Source: Phallusia mammillata (lineage: Eukaryota). Taken from it: DNA of 64,000 bases. The stretch is from positions 25,730,001 to 25,794,000 of the forward strand of contig OZ281497.1 of NCBI GenBank assembly GCA_965637545.1, in the 5' to 3' direction. A program made the position numbers and the translations under genes. Below the pieces are notes generated by a model, which was not told the origin of the DNA, searched no databases, and saw only the letters and a list, made by a program, of their open reading frames with translations. Within the stretch, counting starts at the first letter, position 1, and each line of letters opens with the position of its first letter. Of the stretch, positions 34,769 through 42,475 are shown piece by piece.

Positions 34769-37700
34769 ATGCAAATCGTGACTACTGTCTGCTTATCAGG
34801 TATGCTGTTTATTATTGACCATGAAGTATTTAATCTAAGCAATGCAGGTGTATCGAAATTGGATCCTAACTGCCTTTGGTGCGTTTAAAACATTAGTTTT
34901 AGAGTGGTTGTTTGTGCTAGTATAGCACAGTTGGTATAAGACGTCAAATCTGAATAGTTATCTGTTGTGGGTTCGAATCCCACCGCTAGATTATTTACAC
35001 TTCACCTTTTATGCGGAAATATTTGCTTAAAGCAGGGGTTCTTAACCAGGGGGTGCGAGAACTGTTCCTAGGGGCTGCGGGGATGCCGAATTCTTAAAGT
35101 TGGTTAGGTCTATTCTATAAAAATACAAAAAACCCAGGGGGTGCGAAAATTGGTTGGTGATTTGAAAGGGGTGCAGCAAGGAAAAAAGGTTAATGACCAC
35201 TGGATTAAAGGCATGAATTCAGGAAGACACCTGACGTTTCAAACCTGTTTAATCTACCTTTAAAGTATGTTTGAACTACAAACTAAGTAACATTACCGCA
35301 ACGAAACCTTATGCCATATACTGAAGTGTTTACAATGCACCTTTAAGAAATTATTCAAACATTTGTGGCTCGCAATAAATTGTTGCTTTGTATTTTCAGC
35401 GTTCCTGGTTGCCAATGCTATTTTGCATGGAGCAGCACAAACAGGTAAAAGCAAACATTTTAGGTCAGAAAATGCGAATGTTTGGGGCTACTCATTTCTA
35501 ACATTTTGGTCAACCAACGATTGTTTAAATTTGTCAGAAATATTGTTTTTTGATCAACTCTATAACGAAACAAATTAAAGTCCTGTATTTTAAAAAAAGT
35601 CCGGTATTAAGTACAACATAACGTCGCCATGTTGTATGTTGTTACAAAAATATAAGTTCTGTTTTGTTTTATTGTTTCAAATAGCTTGTCGAAAAATTAA
35701 GTAACAGTGGTTCCCAAGCGCGCAAGAGGAGTTTTAAAAACTTTAGGGGTGACATTTACTTTGATTTTATAACTTACATGTGGTTTGTAAATAGACACAT
35801 CAGCTTTGGGAACATATCCTGTAAAGTTAATGAAAGGCCCAATTTTAAGTGATATTTGTATGGTTTATCATCTACTAACTTAATTAGTCTGTTGGAAAGG
35901 AATGAAAATGTTTGGAACTGTTAAGGTCAATAATTCGTCGATAAAAGTTGGAACCACTGTCATACAAAATAGCACTTCAAAACACTTTGTTGGTTTCAGG
36001 CTAGTGGAGTTATCGAAAGTATTTTTTATGGGGGGTCGCTGTCAGTTATAAAAATATTTTGTGGTTTGGATTTTTGTAGATTGTGGTAGTTTCTTTTGGT
36101 GGTGCCCCGAAGACGATGTTTGTATATCAATGTTTGGTCGTTGCGATGGCTTGCCCCACTGCTCCGGAGGAAGCGATGAAGTGAACTGTGACGAATGGGG
36201 TGAGGCTAAGTACTTAGTTGACCGCGTGATCGTAAATATTATGATCATCATCATAACAGCCTACCCCTACATCATATTATACGTCCACCACAGAGTTGTA
36301 AGTCGGGTCGGGTTTGGGCTTAGGTTTCTTCAAATAAACGGACTAGATTCGGGCCTGACTTTTTTTTAATAAATTAACTAGCTAAGTAGCGAGTTGCTAG
36401 ACCTGATGTCAAAACAGCCCTAAAACGCCATGTTTAAGACCAATTTCTCAATGTATACGCCTGTCAATCAAACTTTCCGGCCTAAACGGACTTCTTAAAA
36501 ACGATTCTGGTTCGGATCGGGTTTGGGCTCCAATTTCAGGCCTGTTTACAACTCTGGTCCACCATAAGGCTTGAGTTTAAACACTAAGCCCGACGTTCAA
36601 ATTCTCTCAGTCATCTACGGTTTACATTTTGTGAATTTTAAACAAGGTTTTTTTTACCCCACTACAACCCTACGTCTTTTGTGCACCAATATTTACTCCC
36701 AAAGCATGTCAAAATTCCTACATGGGATAAATTTAACTTCGGTTAAAAAGCATTACACTTAAGATTTTGGTTCACAAAACTTTTTTTCAAGAAAGCATTG
36801 TTGTGTAAATTATTATTTTATCAATCGTTTTTCTTCGAAATTATTTCTCAATTTCTATCTGTACAGATTGTTTGCCCAGTCAATGGAAATGTAAGAATTC
36901 GAGCATCTGTATTCCTCAGTTCGCTCGCTGTGACGGGAAACTTAATTGTCCTGACGGGGAAGACGAGTTAAACTGCGAATCTTGGGGTAAGAAAATATAA
37001 TTAGGGTAATGGGCGTTGGTGGAATTCAAATTTGTAGTCAACCGGTTCTATCACAAAAGTCATATTTTTCAGTCGGTTTTGTTACAAAAAGTCTATTGAC
37101 AGTAACCAGTAATGCTAACCGGTTCGCTGATCTCATAGAATTTCTTCAGACGGTTCTATAGAACCGGTGCATCAGCTGAATCCCACACTGGTAATGGGGT
37201 TCAAATTTCCTACCTAACACAGAAAGTTAGTCGTTTTGATATGTCTTGTTCCACAAGTATCTCTCCCATAGTTGTGTTTACCCACAATGCGCCAACCTCA
37301 CTTTTTTGCGAGCCCCGGTCACATAACGCTTTATAATACGTTGTAGCTGCAGCGCGTATAGCCATTATTCACAAATCATGCCCTTCACTGTTTTGCGCTC
37401 CATAACGTTTTGAGGTTGAGTAGCTATTTTCCCGCGAGTTTTATTGCACTTGTATCGCTACGATTTTCTTTCGCTAAACGAAGTAAAGTCATACAACTCT
37501 TTTCAAGTTAATGACATGTGCTTTCCGTAAAACAACTTTCATTGAAGCATAGAGTCCTAACTTACCAAAATTTGTAAATAATGTAAAAAAAACTTGAGTT
37601 TTCGGGTTTGGGTTTGAATTCGGGCTTAAGAGGCGATATTTATGTAATAGTTCAATCTTCGCTATATCGGTTCGGGTTTTGAAATTTAGATTTTGGGTAG

Positions 37701-40700
37701 GGACCGGACTTGGGTCCAAAATTGCGGCCAGTTTGCAACTCTGGTGTGTTGTTTTTAGACTGCTGGTCCAATATGAGGAAATGCAACGACAACAAACAGT
37801 GCTTTTCATCAACGCAGAGGTGTGACGGCGAAACCGATTGCTTCGATTGGTCTGACGAAATAGGCTGTATCGGTAAGAATCCATAAGAAATTTGACGGCC
37901 GCCGTGACTTTGCCGTTCGTACTGATACTAAAGTAGGATTACCCTATCTGCGTGGGCAAAATTCCGGACAGTTTAATTAACTATGTTTGGCGACACCAAA
38001 GTTATGTTACATTGCATTATATGACGTTACCAACTCAAAAAGTGCCATTTTTGATAAAATATCATTACTATCACAGAGATAAAAAGCGTAGTTTCATTTC
38101 TAAATAAGTTACAAAGCAAAGAATTTTACAACATCATTCAGATTCAGAATATTTGTAGCTTTCAATACGCATGTAGTTTCTCATGAATGTGCGTGGTAGG
38201 GTGCATCCTACATCAAAATTAGCACAGATAACAGTTATAATGCAAACCTTCTAGTCACCCATAAAAAATTGTAAAAACTAACGTAGGTTAAGCTACTTGG
38301 CGTTAAAATCCTGGACATTGAGAGTGTTATTGAAAGTTCTTTCCAGACCCAGATTTTACACCTGCATTCCGAACGTTTTGGGAAATTTCCGACGTGTGGC
38401 AACCTTATACGAAAGCAATTTAGATGGTGTTGTGTTTGTGAACATGTTTTATCTGATTTCAGCTTGCACGCCAAAACAAGCATTATGTGAAGATAGCGGT
38501 CAGTGCATTGACGGCTTTCGGATATGCGATGGTGTGCCAAATGATTGCACAGATGGATCCGATGAGAGAAACTGTAACTGTACGTATAAACCAAAATAAA
38601 CCACTTGAATAAAAAATAGCATTAATGACATCCATAGCTTAAAAAGTTCCAAAATGTTGGCCGGTAAATTAGCGTTTGGAGATTTAACGCAAAAATACTT
38701 ATTTAACATGATATTTAGGACTAAAAGTAGAAAGGACAGAAAAAAGGGGTTTTATACATTATTCCATGTTGGTTAATTTGTGTCACTACAAGTTTAACGG
38801 GTAATCGAAAGACTATGCAATGTTATGATTGCTGGATACATATAGTGCGTCAAACGCCAACTAATTGCTTATCTCTTTATGGCCCCAACGATTGATCCTG
38901 GAGTAAAAAAGATAACTTTTTTTGCATTTTTGTTGTTATAGCTATGTGCCTTGCTGATGAGCTACTTCTCAACGACACAGACTTGCAGCTTTCCAATTCT
39001 GGTTAGTTTGAAATAAACCCGTCCCATATAAACCAGTTTCAACAATTTTTTTTTATCGTTCATTTTAGATTCGATTTTAGAATGCCCATTCGGCTCAACA
39101 GGTCCAAATTGTTCCGCGGCGTGTGTCCAATGCCTTCTGCCTCACTGCAAGAGAGATCCATTCCTGCACACAGTCTTTGATGTAACGTTGGGAAATAGCT
39201 CACAATGCGTTCCATTAGCGGCAGAATGGCTCACCATCCGTAACAGCAAGCTTTTCAATCTCACACAAAGCACATTTTGGCAAATCAAAGATCGCATTAA
39301 GTTCCTCAAGCTTAATAGTGTTTCAGCTGCCAACATTGAGACCAATGCTTTTGCTGACTTAAAGATAAACTTTCTGTACTTAAACTACATGGGCTTAACG
39401 ACAATAATTCTACCAAACATTGGTATAACAACTTTGCTAATTTTAAATCTTGACAATAACAGACTTGAAACTATTCCGAACGAACTGGTTTTTACCCAAC
39501 TCATCAGTTTGTCAGTCAATAGGAACAAAATCCAAAACCTTTCTAATAGTTTTTCGGATGGACTGCCAAAATCATTGGAAACTCTGTATTTGCATCACAA
39601 CTGCATTCAGATAATAGGTCTCGTTGCGTTTAAACGACTCACAGAGATCGAACTGTTGGACCTAAGACATAACCAGATTCAAACTCTTGCCCTTGGTCTT
39701 TTTCGCAACCAACGTAGTTTGCGCTTTCTTTACCTACAAGGCAACAACATTAGGCAAATTCCAAGTCTTGTGGGGCTACCTGGTAGAGTGGTATTTTATT
39801 TGGACGCAAACAGCAATTGCTCAGCTTTTCCAGAGAATATTACTGAGTGGCGTTGCCGTCAGTTTCCCAATTCGTTTCCCGACACTGAAAGCTTCTTCCT
39901 AATAGACCAAAGTGACAATTGCAACGGAGTCAACTGTTCACGTGACAACACCTGCGTCGACCTTCTGGGCTCGTATGACTGTCCGGGCACTTGCGAAGTT
40001 TGCAACTTTGATGCTCTTCGTACTGAACGGTAACCTATACAACTATGTTTGTAATAATACAAAGCTTTTCAGATTTGTTTGGTCACTCTACAAAATAGTT
40101 CGATTTGACAAAGTTATATTTGTAATTGTAATTATAGCTTAGGAAATAAGTCCTCTCGGGTCCAAAACTTTTTGCTTTGGTTATCCGTAACTAACAAGTT
40201 TGTTATAGTAATACTGCCAATTTCTGATCCTATCCTTTAAATCACTTTCAAACAAAGGTTTTAAACTTTCAACTATTCCGAACTTTGTCACTTGTTTTAG
40301 AAATTGGTTGTTTTATTTTTTTATTCCGTGTCTTGTAAATTTGATTACGTAATAGTTCAGTGGCTCCAACTTCTTTTATACTTTATGACCCAAATGTTTA
40401 GACCATATCTGTTGGTTGCACATTAGATGCCAAGTTTTAAAAATCTGTGCAGCTATACGGTCACGATTGACTATTACAGCTTTTTTAGCATGTATTAATA
40501 CATTTTTAAATGACTATGTGGGCCACTAAAATGTTTTCATGACCCACTGTTAAACCATGATGTACAGTTTAGAAACCACTCCATTAGACATTTCAGCCCT
40601 GGGTAAAAGTTTGATACCCAACTTAACCAGTGGTGGGATTTAGCCGGTTCCCACCGGTTCGCAGCGGTTCTACAGAACCGTCTCATGAAACTTTATGAGA

Positions 40701-42475
40701 TCAGCGAACCGGTTAGCATTACTGGTTACTGTCAATGGACTTTTTGTAACAGCGGCTGAAAAAGCAACTGGCTGCAAAATATGACTATTGTGATAGAACC
40801 GACTGACAAAAAATTCGAATCCCACCACTGAATTTACCACATATAACTTTCCTATGTTTTCAGCTGTCAAACCGAGATAACCGACATGGAGGGAAACACG
40901 CAGGGTTGTGACCTTCGTTGCTCATGTTCGAATGATACCCTCAGTTGCTCTCACACCAAGTTTGCAAACATCTTTACAGGAGAACTCTGTATTCCGCCGC
41001 ACATAACAAGTCTTCACTTCAACAATGTTTCCTGGAGCGACGATGTCAACCTGCAAACGTTCCTATCGAAAATCGACAACTTAAACTTCACCTTGACGAT
41101 CGAAAACCAAGATGCATTTGACCTTGTGAGCTTTTTAAACCAAAGCAGTTTGTTATTGGGTTTAAAGAAGCTTTCACTTCGGGGTAATAACATTCAATCG
41201 GTCCCTGGAATCCAAATTGATAGTTTGCAGTCATTGGATTTGTCCGGAAACCGTGTTACATCGATATCAAACGGTAACTTTGCTGGTCTACCCAGCCTAC
41301 AAAGACTCAACTTATCTGGAAATGCAATAAACCGAATTGAGGAAGGTGCCTTAATTAACGCAACTCAAATAAGGATTCTAGACATTCGTAATAACCAACA
41401 GTCTTTAGAGTATCCGCACAACTTGTTGAAAGACCTTTCCAAACTCGAAGCAGTCTACGGAGACGTATTTTGGATATGCTGTCTGCCCCTTAGTGTCACT
41501 TCTATTGAATGTGTTTCCCCACAGGATAAGATATCTTCTTGTGATAGGCTGATCCGGGATGAGCCAATCAGGGTGCTCTTATGGATACAAAGCCTTGTCG
41601 CAACTATTGGCAACGTGGTGGTGTTTATTCTCCGGGCTAGAGAATATCGAATGAAAACAAGCAGTTCATCAAGGCTAGACGTCTTATTTATCGCTATTTT
41701 GTCATTAGCTGATTTGTGCATGGGAATATATCTCACAGTAATCGCTTCAGTTGATCAGTTTTACGCTAACGACTTTTACGTACACTCGTCAGCATGGATC
41801 GAAAGTCCGCTGTGCAAATTTTCCGGCGCTTTGTCTTTATTTTCGTCGCAAGCATCGGTTTTTACACTTTTGGTTATAACATTGACTCGGTGTCTCTCAG
41901 TTCTGCGACCCATGTACTTTTTACAGCTAAACAAACGCATTTTTCGTTTTGCCATCGCCTTGGTTTGGTTTCTTGCACTAATAATGGCTACTCTGCCTCT
42001 ATATGTTTTTCCTGACTTTTTCTCTGACTCGGCACTTTGTTTGCCAAAGATTTTCTCCACTTTACAAGACCAGACGTGGTGGTACACTATGATAATAATG
42101 ATTACCAACATGCTAGCCTTTCTGATAATGATAATAGCTTATGTAACACTGGTAACTGCCGCCACTCGTAACAGTTTTAGTTCTGCAGACCGGCGAAGAA
42201 GTGGCCTATCCCAAAACCGAAGTTTGGGATATCGTGTGTTTTTCATAATTGCCACTGATTGTCTTTGCTGGGTGCCAATATGTGCAATGGCGTTTGCCTC
42301 GCTTGGTAATGTTGATTTTTCGTCACAAGAAGCGCTGTTGTACCCCATCACTGCAGTGATTCTATTGCCTATCAACTCGGCAATGAACCCTTTGATTTAT
42401 ACCTTCCTGTCTCATTGTCGTTGTACAAAACTACAACAAACCTTGTCAAAGTACACCACTTCATCACAAAAGTAG
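34769..42475 (+). CDS. LDLa- and LRR-containing GPCR, type C LGR (GRL101/RXFP-like), ~1055 aa, 9 exons
   Basis: join(34769-34799,35400-35444,36080-36199,36867-36986,37759-37872,38463-38579,38942-39001,39081-40029,40864-42475); 3168 nt, phases consistent (an alternative in-frame acceptor at 39069 adds 4 aa). Signal peptide [25 protein letters not shown]; four LDLa exons (CDG...C..GSDE..C); two LRR arrays; hinge CC..C.SP.D.ISSC..LI; 7TM with [40 protein letters not shown], as in the RXFP/GRL101 class. Exons 1-2 and the 60-nt exon 7 are the least certain. Confidence 0.88.
35033..35202. mobile_element. Charlie-type hAT MITE
   Basis: CAGGGGTTCTTAACC/GGTTAATGACCACTG; TSD GCTTAAAG/GATTAAAG. Confidence 0.8.
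35705..35959. mobile_element. Charlie-type hAT MITE family F
   Basis: CAGTGGTTCC...GGAACCACTG; internal similarity to 47445-47696; TSD not found. Confidence 0.7.
36291..36556 (+). mobile_element. hAT MITE family B
   Basis: Perfect 11-bp TIR CAGAGTTGTAA/TTACAACTCTG; perfect TSD GTCCACCA; CGGGYY-type subterminal repeats. Confidence 0.9.
37014..37190 (+). mobile_element. hAT MITE family A
   Basis: Internal sequence shared with the other family A copies; perfect TSD GTAATGGG. Confidence 0.85.
40628..40830 (-). mobile_element. hAT MITE family A (reverse orientation)
   Basis: TIR CAGTGGTGGGATT/AATCCCACCACTG; TSD 6/8 match. Confidence 0.85.

What the first reader, a model, noticed from the sequence alone, without database searches (positions are those of the whole stretch)
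34769..42475. GPCR with a 4xLDLa - LRR - EGF-like - LRR - 7TM ectodomain
Seen: signal peptide, four LDLa modules, a Cys-rich [10 protein letters not shown] cap, ~9 LRRs, a CNGVNC...[10 protein letters not shown] segment resembling a truncated calcium-binding EGF module, a second N-cap ([14 protein letters not shown]), ~6-7 LRRs, then a type C LGR hinge and 7TM. Known: RXFP1/2 have one LDLa plus one LRR array; snail GRL101 has many LDLa plus one LRR array. Inference: two separate LRR solenoids with an EGF-like spacer may be an undescribed orphan architecture, possibly a two-ligand or pattern-sensing receptor.
Basis: partly seen in the sequence, partly recalled or inferred. Interest (0 to 1): 0.7.

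Follow-up and report, generated by a model that had tools for sequence, protein, structure and literature searches.

The report
Sea-squirt hormone-type receptor with doubled LRR domain
This is a real, intact sea-squirt gene for an orphan relaxin/GRL101-type G-protein-coupled receptor whose outer part carries two leucine-rich-repeat domains joined by an EGF-like piece; the layout is conserved across ascidians, was not found described in the papers searched, and its function is untested.

Summary
Seven GT-AG exons on the + strand (34769-42475) have compatible phases and give a 1,040-codon frame. The order is signal peptide, four LDLa modules (one per exon), a six-Cys cap, about 9 LRRs, a Cys-rich C-flank with an EGF-like module, a second N-cap, about 6-7 LRRs, a type C hinge and a 7TM core.

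It is one gene, not two. The same exon layout, with the same phase-2 intron between the two large exons, occurs in Styela clava (RefSeq XP_039271561, "GRL101-like") and in two unnamed assemblies. A partial Ciona model also spans both LRR blocks.

Among the 150 best relatives in a 1.8-billion-protein library, only the Styela protein has the first LRR block and spacer. The others checked by name and domain map carry an LDLa array, about 6 LRRs and a 7TM core.

The 7TM core sits in type C LGRs, sister to the LRR-less LDLa-GPCR expansion of ascidians. GRL101 versus relaxin subtype is unresolved.

The EGF call is weak in the window's own sequence but is supported by a four-species profile.

The scan had already noted the LRR-less relatives elsewhere in this genome, but not this gene. 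Verdict: a new variant of a known kind. Ligand and the "two-ligand" idea remain untested.

The parts
34769..34847 (+). Exon 1: start codon and signal peptide (26 codons plus 1 base; donor GTGTAT). An earlier GT at 34800 is in the same phase but would leave only 10 residues.
   Evidence: The hydrophobic N-terminus followed by D-x-E-V resembles the Styela N-terminus by eye.
36080..36199 (+). Exon 2: LDLa module 1 (phase 1-1). Weakest of the four; the Ca-cage Asp positions are partly replaced.
   Evidence: Pfam Ldl_recept_a E 4.3e-5, 24.1 bits, exactly at the cut-off; borders.
36867..36986 (+). Exon 3: LDLa module 2 (phase 1-1)
   Evidence: Pfam E 2.7e-10; borders.
37759..37872 (+). Exon 4: LDLa module 3 (phase 1-1)
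   Evidence: Pfam E 3e-7; borders.
38463..38579 (+). Exon 5: LDLa module 4 (phase 1-1)
   Evidence: Pfam E 9.5e-7; borders.
39069..40029 (+). Exon 6 (961 nt, enters in phase 1, leaves in phase 2): the whole first LRR domain with its caps and the EGF-like module
   Evidence: The orthologous single exon exists in Styela (L017 15221-16219), L018 (7830-8759) and L021 (2584-3570). The asymmetric phases mean it cannot be skipped in frame.
39080..39214 (+). Six-Cys N-terminal cap of LRR block 1, with a CxxG[FWY]xGxxC EGF-type motif
   Evidence: All six Cys are invariant in 4 sequences. A profile weakly hits Notch EGF junctions (E 0.004-0.04). No Pfam family.
39215..39784 (+). LRR block 1, about 9 repeats
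   Evidence: Pfam LRR_8 4.5e-23. The AlphaFold model has 9 regularly spaced strands, with pLDDT about 80-94 over most of residues 51-200 and lower (65-77) at the C-terminal end of the block. Foldseek best matches are Nogo receptor and LGR4/5 ectodomains.
39785..39892 (+). C-terminal flank of block 1, with two invariant Cys (the NCS motif and a Cys 12 residues later)
   Evidence: Alignment A2. The same motif is present in the Ciona model.
39893..40027 (+). EGF-like module: five invariant Cys, cbEGF-type start and CxDxxGxYxC core, atypically short after Cys4
   Evidence: Profile of 4 orthologous spacers against the PDB: all meaningful hits are EGF modules, best 3e-4. Pfam is sub-threshold in two orthologues and gives nothing in the window. 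AlphaFold confidence is below 50.
40864..42475 (+). Exon 7: second N-cap, LRR block 2, hinge, 7TM core, C-tail and stop (TAG 42473-42475)
   Evidence: The phase-2 acceptor matches the exon 6 donor.
40904..40999 (+). LRRNT-like N-cap of block 2 (CxxxCxCx6C ... LCIPP)
   Evidence: Alignment A4. No Pfam LRRNT hit.
41000..41440 (+). LRR block 2, 6-7 repeats: the canonical LGR repeat array
   Evidence: Pfam LRR_8 1.7e-16. Aligns to the RXFP1 LRRs (7tmw). It is the best match in this genome to the Patiria GRL101-like LRR+hinge (2.6e-23), and the listed weaker matches stop before the hinge.
41441..41566 (+). Short type C hinge (YGD-x-F-x-I-CC ... C-x-P-x-D-x-ISSC-x-x-LI)
   Evidence: Invariant columns in A4. 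The match to the GRL101-like query runs through the hinge.
41567..42400 (+). Rhodopsin-family 7TM core. D2.50, R3.50, CWxP and NPxxY are present; Thr replaces D/E3.49.
   Evidence: Pfam 7tm_1 3.1e-23; RXFP1 3.5e-49; motif table.

Best explanation
A single seven-exon ascidian gene (34769-42475, + strand) encodes a roughly 1,040-residue orphan class A GPCR of the type C LGR group, the relaxin-receptor/GRL101 kind.

Shown: the ectodomain order is signal peptide, 4 LDLa, six-Cys cap, about 9 LRR, Cys-rich flank plus EGF-like module, LRRNT-like cap, 6-7 LRR, short type C hinge, 7TM. The membrane-proximal LRR block with its hinge is the part that matches the LRR+hinge of GRL101-type receptors, so it is most likely the ancestral part. 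The distal LRR block with its caps is an addition seen only in ascidian-type sequences. It is encoded by one asymmetric exon that cannot be skipped in frame.

Inferred from how RXFP1 and other LGRs work: a protein or peptide ligand binds the concave face of an LRR solenoid, and the LDLa/linker region helps drive the 7TM core, which signals through a G protein (Gs in relaxin receptors). The most likely ligand class is an insulin/relaxin-superfamily peptide; three such peptides are known in Ciona without a known GPCR. The extra, independently capped LRR domain most likely adds a second binding surface or a spacer that extends the ligand-binding arm.

The whole ascidian clade has lost the acidic residue of the D/ERY motif (T-R-x). 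This could alter basal activity, but that is speculation.
For: Domains.

Splice sites, phases and the 3,123-nt frame.

One gene:
- The same exon layout (four one-LDLa exons, one 333-codon LRR+EGF-like exon, one LRR+7TM exon) occurs in Styela clava XP_039271561, in L021 and in L018.
- The intron between the two large exons is phase 2 at the same spot in all four, inside an Arg codon before a Cys in three of them.
- The Ciona H2XRM0 model joins the end of block 1 to block 2 and the 7TM core.
- The second part has no signal peptide of its own.

Conserved Cys framework in both caps and the spacer.

Two separately confident LRR segments divided by a low-confidence linker in the Styela ectodomain model.

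Type C placement:
- RXFP1 is the best solved relative, and the alignment runs from the LRRs to TM7.
- The nearest named non-tunicate relatives are GRL101-like proteins of echinoderm, hemichordate, mollusc, arthropod and brachiopod.
- The tree separates type C from the glycoprotein-hormone receptors at 100/100.

Block 2 plus hinge is the best match in this genome to a GRL101 LRR+hinge, and the listed weaker matches stop before the hinge.

7TM motifs are intact.

Ciona has ILP, relaxin-like and IGF-like peptides with no reported function (PMC12702675). RXFP/LGR3-type receptors are reported lost in urochordates (PMC11863921).
Against: - No transcript evidence was available here, so the junctions are inferred from phases and conservation.
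- The ligand, G-protein coupling and the role of block 1 are inference only.
- The subtype is unresolved. AU tests reject neither a union with the relaxin/Lgr4 clade (p 0.14) nor one with GRL101-like proteins (p 0.30).
- The window's own EGF-like stretch has no Pfam support.
- The Cys-rich parts fold with pLDDT below 50.
Confidence: 0.72

Rival explanations
1. There are two transcription units: a secreted LDLa-LRR-EGF protein (exons 1-6) and a separate LRR-7TM receptor starting at the in-frame ATG at 40886. The single gene would then be a modelling artefact.
For: An ATG lies 22 nt inside exon 7 and opens a 529-codon ORF. No RNA data were available. The 833-nt intron carries a repeat copy.
Against: - The donor at 40029 and the acceptor at 40864 match in phase, and the same phase-2 intron is kept in four divergent sequences.
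- RefSeq joins the parts in Styela, and the Ciona model spans both blocks.
- The exon 7 product alone has a 240-residue ectodomain and no signal peptide.
- Exon 6 has no in-frame stop before its donor.
Confidence: 0.06
2. It is a pattern- or self-recognition receptor. The two capped LRR domains would act like the multi-cysteine-cluster ectodomain of Toll receptors, with output through a G protein instead of a TIR domain.
For: After the Styela protein itself, the best matches to the Styela block 1 + spacer region are Toll and TLR proteins. The sister clade is a large, fast-duplicating LDLa-GPCR family. EST matches to that family in Ciona were mostly from blood cells (PMC2396169).
Against: The Toll/TLR matches are generic LRR similarity (24-32% identity over half of the query). 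The gene is single copy here, unlike diversifying immune receptors. Block 2 and the hinge are those of hormone-type LGRs. There are no expression or polymorphism data.
Confidence: 0.1
3. It is a ligand-independent or non-canonical receptor. Loss of the acidic D/ERY residue would make the core constitutively active or uncoupled, and the ectodomain would serve adhesion or scaffolding, as LGR4-6 scaffold R-spondin without classical G-protein signalling.
For: Thr (Leu in L018) replaces D/E3.49 in all six clade members, whereas most other type C sequences keep D/E. LGR4 is the second-best solved relative (8e-45).
Against: R3.50, D2.50, CWxP and NPxxY are kept in the window, Ciona, Styela, L020 and L021. 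A few GRL101-like proteins also lack the acidic residue (His). Conservation of the 7TM core at 43-48% identity between distant ascidian-type sequences points to purifying selection on a working core.
Confidence: 0.1

Closest known systems
GRL101-type (type C2) LGRs: Lymnaea GRL101 and its bilaterian homologues
   Same: Several LDLa modules at the N-terminus. About six LRRs next to a short Cys-rich hinge. A 7TM core of the type C group. The best non-tunicate sequence matches carry this name. All are orphans.
   Different: GRL101 has twelve LDLa and one array of six LRRs (PMC8286064). Here there are four LDLa and a second, independently capped array of about 9 LRRs plus an EGF-like module inserted between the LDLa modules and the canonical array. 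The 7TM tree does not place the ascidian clade firmly inside the GRL101 group.
Relaxin-family receptors RXFP1/RXFP2 and insect Lgr3/Lgr4 (type C1)
   Same: LDLa + LRR + short hinge + 7TM plan. RXFP1 is the best solved relative, aligned from the LRRs to TM7 (3.5e-49).
   Different: They have one LDLa and one array of about 10 LRRs. The ascidian clade falls outside the well-supported relaxin/Lgr4-like clade (100/99) in the ML tree, although an AU test does not reject a union (p 0.14). RXFP/LGR3-type receptors are reported lost in urochordates (PMC11863921).
Ascidian LDLRR-GPCRs (Kamesh et al. 2008, Ciona)
   Same: Sister clade in the 7TM tree (97/93 and 98/91). Both lack D/E3.49 and share an extra Cys after CWxP. 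Both have LDLa modules.
   Different: Those receptors have many LDLa modules and no LRRs, have long open frames of 1,100-1,450 codons, and number more than 70 in this genome. The window's gene is single copy, has 7 exons and carries two LRR domains.
Ciona ci0100148288, the 'INSL3/relaxin GPCR-like' receptor with five LRRs (PMC2396169), and UniProt H2XRM0
   Same: H2XRM0 is the closest named protein (44-48% identity) and contains the end of block 1, its C-flank, block 2, the hinge and the 7TM core. It is probably the orthologue.
   Different: The published description and the model are N-terminally incomplete: no LDLa, no start of block 1, no EGF-like module and no second N-cap. That ci0100148288 equals H2XRM0 was not checked.
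Toll-type multi-cysteine-cluster LRR ectodomains and Slit-type tandem LRR domains
   Same: Two or more LRR solenoids in a row, each with its own Cys-rich caps. Toll/TLR proteins are the next best matches to the Styela block 1 + spacer region.
   Different: There is no TIR domain, and an EGF-like piece stands in place of a standard LRRCT. The similarity is generic to LRRs. This is an analogy of layout, not membership.

Membership tests
LGR (leucine-rich-repeat-containing class A GPCR) | Rhodopsin-family 7TM core preceded by an extracellular LRR domain in the same polypeptide | tested here: met
   7tm_1 3.1e-23 and LRR_8 1.7e-16 lie in one uninterrupted frame, 40847-42472.
LGR (leucine-rich-repeat-containing class A GPCR) | Core signalling motifs of class A receptors (D2.50, D/ERY, CWxP, NPxxY) | tested here: inconclusive
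   D2.50, R3.50, CWxP and NPxxY are present. The acidic residue of D/ERY is Thr, as in the whole ascidian clade.
Type C LGR | LDLa module(s) N-terminal to the LRRs | tested here: met
   Four Ldl_recept_a hits, one per exon. They are joined to the LRR exon by compatible phases, and the same order is seen in Styela, L018 and L021.
Type C LGR | Short hinge with conserved Cys pattern between the last LRR and TM1 | tested here: met
   Invariant YGD...CC...C.P...SSC..LI in A4. The window's match to the Patiria GRL101-like LRR+hinge query runs through the hinge. The alignment to RXFP1 is continuous into TM1.
Type C LGR | 7TM core groups with type C rather than with the type A receptors | tested here: met
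   A 100/100 branch separates FSHR and an Acropora LHCGR-like receptor from all type C rows, including the window. Type B was represented by a single long-branch LGR6 row, which was dropped from the second tree.
GRL101 type (C2) | Multiple LDLa modules | tested here: met
   Four modules; GRL101 has twelve (PMC8286064).
GRL101 type (C2) | A single LRR array of about six repeats directly following the LDLa array | tested here: not met
   Block 2 fits (6-7 repeats). However, a capped 9-repeat block and an EGF-like module lie between the LDLa modules and it. The other top relatives of 850-2,400 residues that were mapped do not show this LDLa / LRR / EGF-like / LRR layout.
GRL101 type (C2) | 7TM core inside the GRL101 clade | tested here: inconclusive
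   Polytomy in the ML tree. The AU test does not reject a union with GRL101-like rows (p 0.30) or with the relaxin-like clade (p 0.14).
Relaxin receptor type (C1: RXFP1/2, Lgr3, Lgr4) | One LDLa plus one array of about 10 LRRs; 7TM core inside the C1 clade | tested here: not met
   The architecture differs. The window lies outside the 100/99 relaxin/Lgr4-like clade, though the AU test is not decisive. No vertebrate RXFP or Drosophila Lgr3 sequences were in the tree.
Calcium-binding EGF module (Pfam EGF_CA / EGF) | Six Cys in the EGF spacing with a D-x-D/N-E-C start and a C-x-D/N-x4-F/Y-x-C core, reaching the family's score cut-off | tested here: inconclusive
   The window has no hit at E<=10. 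Styela gives EGF_CA 18.2 bits against a cut-off of 27. L018 gives EGF 17.2 bits against 21.5. A profile of four spacers hits Notch and factor VII/IX/X EGF modules, best 3e-4, aligned through Cys4-5 only. Spacing after Cys4 is atypical.
Ascidian LDLRR-GPCR family (Kamesh 2008) | LDLa repeats joined directly to a relaxin-receptor-like 7TM core, with no LRRs | tested here: not met
   The window's protein has two LRR domains. It is the sister group, not a member.

The most novel reading that the evidence does not exclude
The ascidian lineage built a dual-site LGR. The membrane-proximal LRR block would bind an insulin/relaxin-superfamily peptide as in other type C receptors. The added, separately capped distal LRR domain with its EGF-like module would bind a second partner, such as a co-ligand, a carrier protein or a non-self pattern. 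One GPCR would then integrate two extracellular inputs, and this gene would also be the ancestor from which the large LRR-less LDLa-GPCR family of tunicates arose.
Probability: 0.12. Interest if true: 0.75.

Novelty: new variant of a known kind. Interest (0 to 1): 0.45.

Why it matters
Type C LGRs are described as LDLa module(s), one LRR array and a 7TM core. A conserved ascidian form with two capped LRR domains and an EGF-like connector widens that picture.

It also corrects the 2008 description of the Ciona counterpart as a five-LRR receptor.

Urochordates are reported to have lost the RXFP/LGR3-type receptor, yet they keep insulin-, relaxin- and IGF-like peptides whose receptors and functions are unknown. 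This single-copy gene is the only GRL101-like LRR+hinge receptor found in this genome. That makes it the obvious candidate to test against those peptides.

It is also the nearest LRR-bearing relative of the expanded LDLa-only GPCR family, so it helps to root that family's origin.

Tried and rejected
1. Word search with exon 7. It was swamped by generic LRR proteins; the best hit was 34% identical and no orthologue was found.
2. Word search with Styela residues 206-600. It returned only the query and Toll/TLR proteins, so no further full-length models turned up. This is weak evidence of absence, because the index needs shared 5-mers.
3. Word search with the 7TM region alone. It gave three hits and no named RXFP or Lgr3, so the tree lacks vertebrate RXFP1/2 and Drosophila Lgr3.
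4. Pfam on the window's own caps and spacer at E<=10. Nothing useful.
5. AlphaFold of exon 6 with a 4-row alignment and of the Styela ectodomain. The LRR parts are confident, the Cys-rich caps and EGF-like part are below pLDDT 50, and pTM is 0.45, so the relative position of the two solenoids is unknown. Alignment A1 used for the second job misplaced the C-terminal halves of the exon 6-like rows onto block 2.
6. Profile-profile comparison of block 1 with block 2. It aligns only LRRs, at 99% probability, as any two LRR domains would. The idea that block 1 plus its C-flank is a tandem duplicate of block 2 plus hinge stays open; I saw some motif resemblance by eye.
7. AU tests for subtype. Not decisive.
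8. Exact look-up of the Ciona model. Not on record, so the Ciona locus could not be read.
9. My first guess of a cnidarian or mollusc origin was dropped once Ciona and Styela proved to be the nearest relatives.
10. Complex prediction was not used, because there is no candidate ligand sequence in hand.
11. All searches were exon by exon, by reference, and frame continuity was checked only by exon lengths and phases.

Full report
**What is in the sequence**

The only long open frames in the window are 39032-40030 and 40847-42472 on the + strand. Pfam finds three LRR_8 stretches in the first frame (E 4.5e-23). In the second it finds LRR_8 (1.7e-16) followed by a rhodopsin-family 7TM domain (3.1e-23). 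Four small frames upstream each hold one LDL-receptor class A module (E 4e-5 to 3e-10). A six-frame scan finds no further LDLa module anywhere in the 64 kb.

**Gene model**

The exons and their borders are as follows.

| Exon | Coordinates | Content |
|---|---|---|
| E1 | 34769-34847 | start codon, signal peptide |
| E2 | 36080-36199 | LDLa 1 |
| E3 | 36867-36986 | LDLa 2 |
| E4 | 37759-37872 | LDLa 3 |
| E5 | 38463-38579 | LDLa 4 |
| E6 | 39069-40029 | LRR block 1 with caps and EGF-like module |
| E7 | 40864-42475 | LRR block 2, hinge, 7TM core, TAG stop |

- All borders are GT-AG.
- Start phases are 0, 1, 1, 1, 1, 1, 2. The lengths add up to 3,123 nt, or 1,040 codons.
- Exon 6 enters in phase 1 and leaves in phase 2. 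It is therefore not a cassette that could be skipped in frame.
Every search was made exon by exon, by reference, and continuity was checked only by arithmetic.

**Organism**

- A scan of 1.84 billion representative proteins with exon 7 gave a partial Ciona intestinalis model as best hit (H2XRM0, 44% identity). Two unnamed assembly proteins and Styela clava XP_039271561 followed.
- The genome is 240 Mb and holds more than 70 long open frames encoding LDLa arrays joined to a relaxin-receptor-like 7TM core without LRRs. This is the LDLRR-GPCR family described in Ciona (PMC2396169).
- The window is therefore from an ascidian.
- Earlier notes of this scan name the species as Phallusia mammillata. 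I did not test the species.

**One gene or two**

- The Styela protein (1,198 aa) matches exon 6 from the first cap Cys to the EGF-like module (E 2e-30). It matches exon 7 further on.
- On its genomic locus the Styela gene has four one-LDLa exons, one 333-codon LRR+EGF-like exon and one LRR+7TM exon.
- Two unnamed contigs show the same order on one strand. They are L021 from a Logan assembly and L018 from an ENA metagenome assembly.
- In all four sequences the intron between the two large exons is phase 2 at the same alignment position. In three of them it lies inside an Arg codon just before a Cys.
- The Ciona model contains the last four repeats and the C-flank of block 1, then block 2 from its fourth repeat, then the 7TM core. 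It too spans both blocks, although it lacks the spacer and the second N-cap, possibly a modelling gap.
- The exon 7 product alone would have a 240-residue ectodomain without a signal peptide.

Together this makes the two-gene reading unlikely. Transcript data are still missing.

**Anatomy of the extra domain**

- An alignment of the four exon 6 products keeps the following Cys invariant:
  - six in the N-cap, which includes a CxxG[FWY]xGxxC motif;
  - two in the C-flank;
  - five in the spacer.
- AlphaFold on this shallow alignment gives a confident solenoid of nine strands (mean pLDDT of most 10-residue blocks about 80-94 between residues 51 and 200). Confidence is below 50 for the C-flank and spacer.
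- Foldseek pairs the solenoid with Nogo receptor and LGR4/5 ectodomains, which are ordinary capped extracellular LRR domains.
- A model of the Styela ectodomain shows two separately confident LRR segments divided by about 70 low-confidence residues, with pTM 0.45. This agrees with two solenoids but says nothing on their mutual position.

**The EGF-like call**

- The window's own spacer has no Pfam hit.
- The Styela spacer gives EGF_CA at E 0.003, and the L018 spacer gives EGF at E 0.0065. Both are under Pfam's cut-offs.
- A profile of the four spacers searched against all PDB sequences returns almost only EGF modules (Notch, factors VII/IX/X). The best hit is E 3e-4, aligned from the D-x-x-E-C start through Cys4-5.
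- I accept "EGF-like, truncated or atypical after Cys4", not "EGF_CA member".
- The N-cap profile weakly resembles the junction of two Notch EGF repeats (E 0.004-0.04). This is a lead only.

**Which part is old**

- In this genome, the LRR+hinge of the Patiria GRL101-like receptor matches the window's block 2 best (2.6e-23). That match runs to within one residue of the end of the hinge query. The listed weaker matches stop at about residue 165 of 221, before the hinge.
- Exon 6 has no close paralogue here. The next match is 6.8e-10, to an unrelated LRR protein.
- Among the 150 best representatives, only the Styela protein aligns to the caps and spacer of exon 6.
- Crude domain maps of the others show an LDLa array, about six LRRs and a 7TM core. 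The ones I looked up are named GRL101-like or relaxin receptor-like.
- Block 2 plus hinge is therefore the canonical LGR part. Block 1 with its caps is an addition seen so far only in ascidian-type sequences.
- Whether block 1 arose by duplication of block 2 or by exon shuffling is open. hhalign aligns only the repeats.

**Placement of the 7TM core**

- RXFP1 is the best solved relative (3.5e-49, aligned from the LRRs to TM7). LGR4 follows at 8e-45 and TSHR at 1.6e-33.
- In maximum-likelihood trees of the 7TM region:
  - the six double-LRR sequences form a clade (99/97 and 100/98);
  - that clade is sister to the LRR-less LDLa-GPCRs (97/93 and 98/91);
  - both lie within type C, apart from the glycoprotein-hormone receptors (100/100);
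  - both lie outside a well-supported relaxin/Lgr4-like clade (100/99).
- The relation to GRL101-like proteins is a polytomy. AU tests reject neither a union with the relaxin-like clade (p 0.14) nor one with GRL101-like rows (p 0.30).
- Two shared features back the sister relation:
  - the D/E3.49 residue is lost (Thr or Leu in the LGR clade, Phe in the LDLa-only family);
  - an extra Cys follows CWxP.
- D2.50, R3.50, CWxP and NPxxY are intact in the window.

**How it most likely works**

- Shown: an intact, conserved, single-copy gene for a membrane receptor with the stated domain order.
- Inferred from established knowledge of RXFP1 and other LGRs: ligand capture on an LRR concave face, a contribution of the LDLa/linker region to activation, and G-protein signalling through the 7TM core.
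- Candidate ligands:
  - The best guess is the ascidian insulin-, relaxin- and IGF-like peptides. They have no known GPCR or function (PMC12702675; PMC3310001).
  - Urochordates are reported to have lost the RXFP/LGR3 type (PMC11863921).
  - Veenstra has proposed IGF-like ligands for GRL101 (PMC8286064).
- The role of the extra LRR domain is speculation. It could be a second binding site, a spacer or a co-receptor surface.

**Novelty**

- Full-text searches for Ciona with GRL101, for LDLRR-GPCR, and for Ciona with RXFP/LGR terms found only the 2008 Ciona GPCR survey. That survey lists one INSL3/relaxin-receptor-like GPCR with five LRRs and no LDLa. It is probably an incomplete model of the orthologue.
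- The full architecture exists as an unremarked RefSeq prediction in Styela.
- It is a new variant of a known kind, conserved across distant ascidians, and of moderate interest.
- The scan had already flagged the LRR-less relatives elsewhere in this genome, but not this gene.

Noticed in passing
own genome G000, e.g. L006-L016 (C3, C5, C6, C1, C8); not in the window: More than 70 long open frames of 1,100-1,450 codons encode LDLa arrays joined directly to a relaxin-receptor-like 7TM core without LRRs. Ciona has 14-15 such LDLRR-GPCRs (Kamesh 2008), so the family looks several times larger here. It is the sister clade of the window's gene and shares Phe/Thr at 3.49 and an extra Cys after CWxP.
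   Followed up: partly
window 37017-37170 (+) and 40661-40827 (-): Two copies of an interspersed element of about 155 nt lie in inverted orientation in intron 3 and intron 6 of the receptor gene (84-92% complementary). It is probably a common small transposon of this genome. No effect on the exons was seen.
   Followed up: no
L018 10076-11704 versus L020 1658-3136 (both from ENA assembly ERZ27241789): One metagenome assembly holds two different members of the double-LRR receptor clade. The L018 copy is on a long branch and has changed key motifs (CWIT instead of CWxP, NPVIH instead of NPxxY, L-R-A at the DRY site). It may be a divergent paralogue with altered signalling, or it may come from a second species.
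   Followed up: no
P0071 (Ciona intestinalis H2XRM0), residues 100-145: The Ciona model runs from the C-flank of LRR block 1 straight into the fourth repeat of block 2. The EGF-like module, the second N-cap and three repeats are missing. This is either a gap or mis-splice in an old gene model, or a real shortening in Ciona.
   Followed up: partly
window 40886: An in-frame ATG lies 22 nt inside exon 7 and opens a 529-codon ORF covering block 2 and the 7TM core. If an internal promoter existed, it would give a receptor without signal peptide, LDLa modules or block 1. There is no evidence for or against.
   Followed up: no
L018 3978-4930: Reverse-transcriptase (RVT_1) ORFs sit between LDLa exons of the orthologous gene on the metagenome contig, which indicates a retroelement inserted in an intron.
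   Followed up: no
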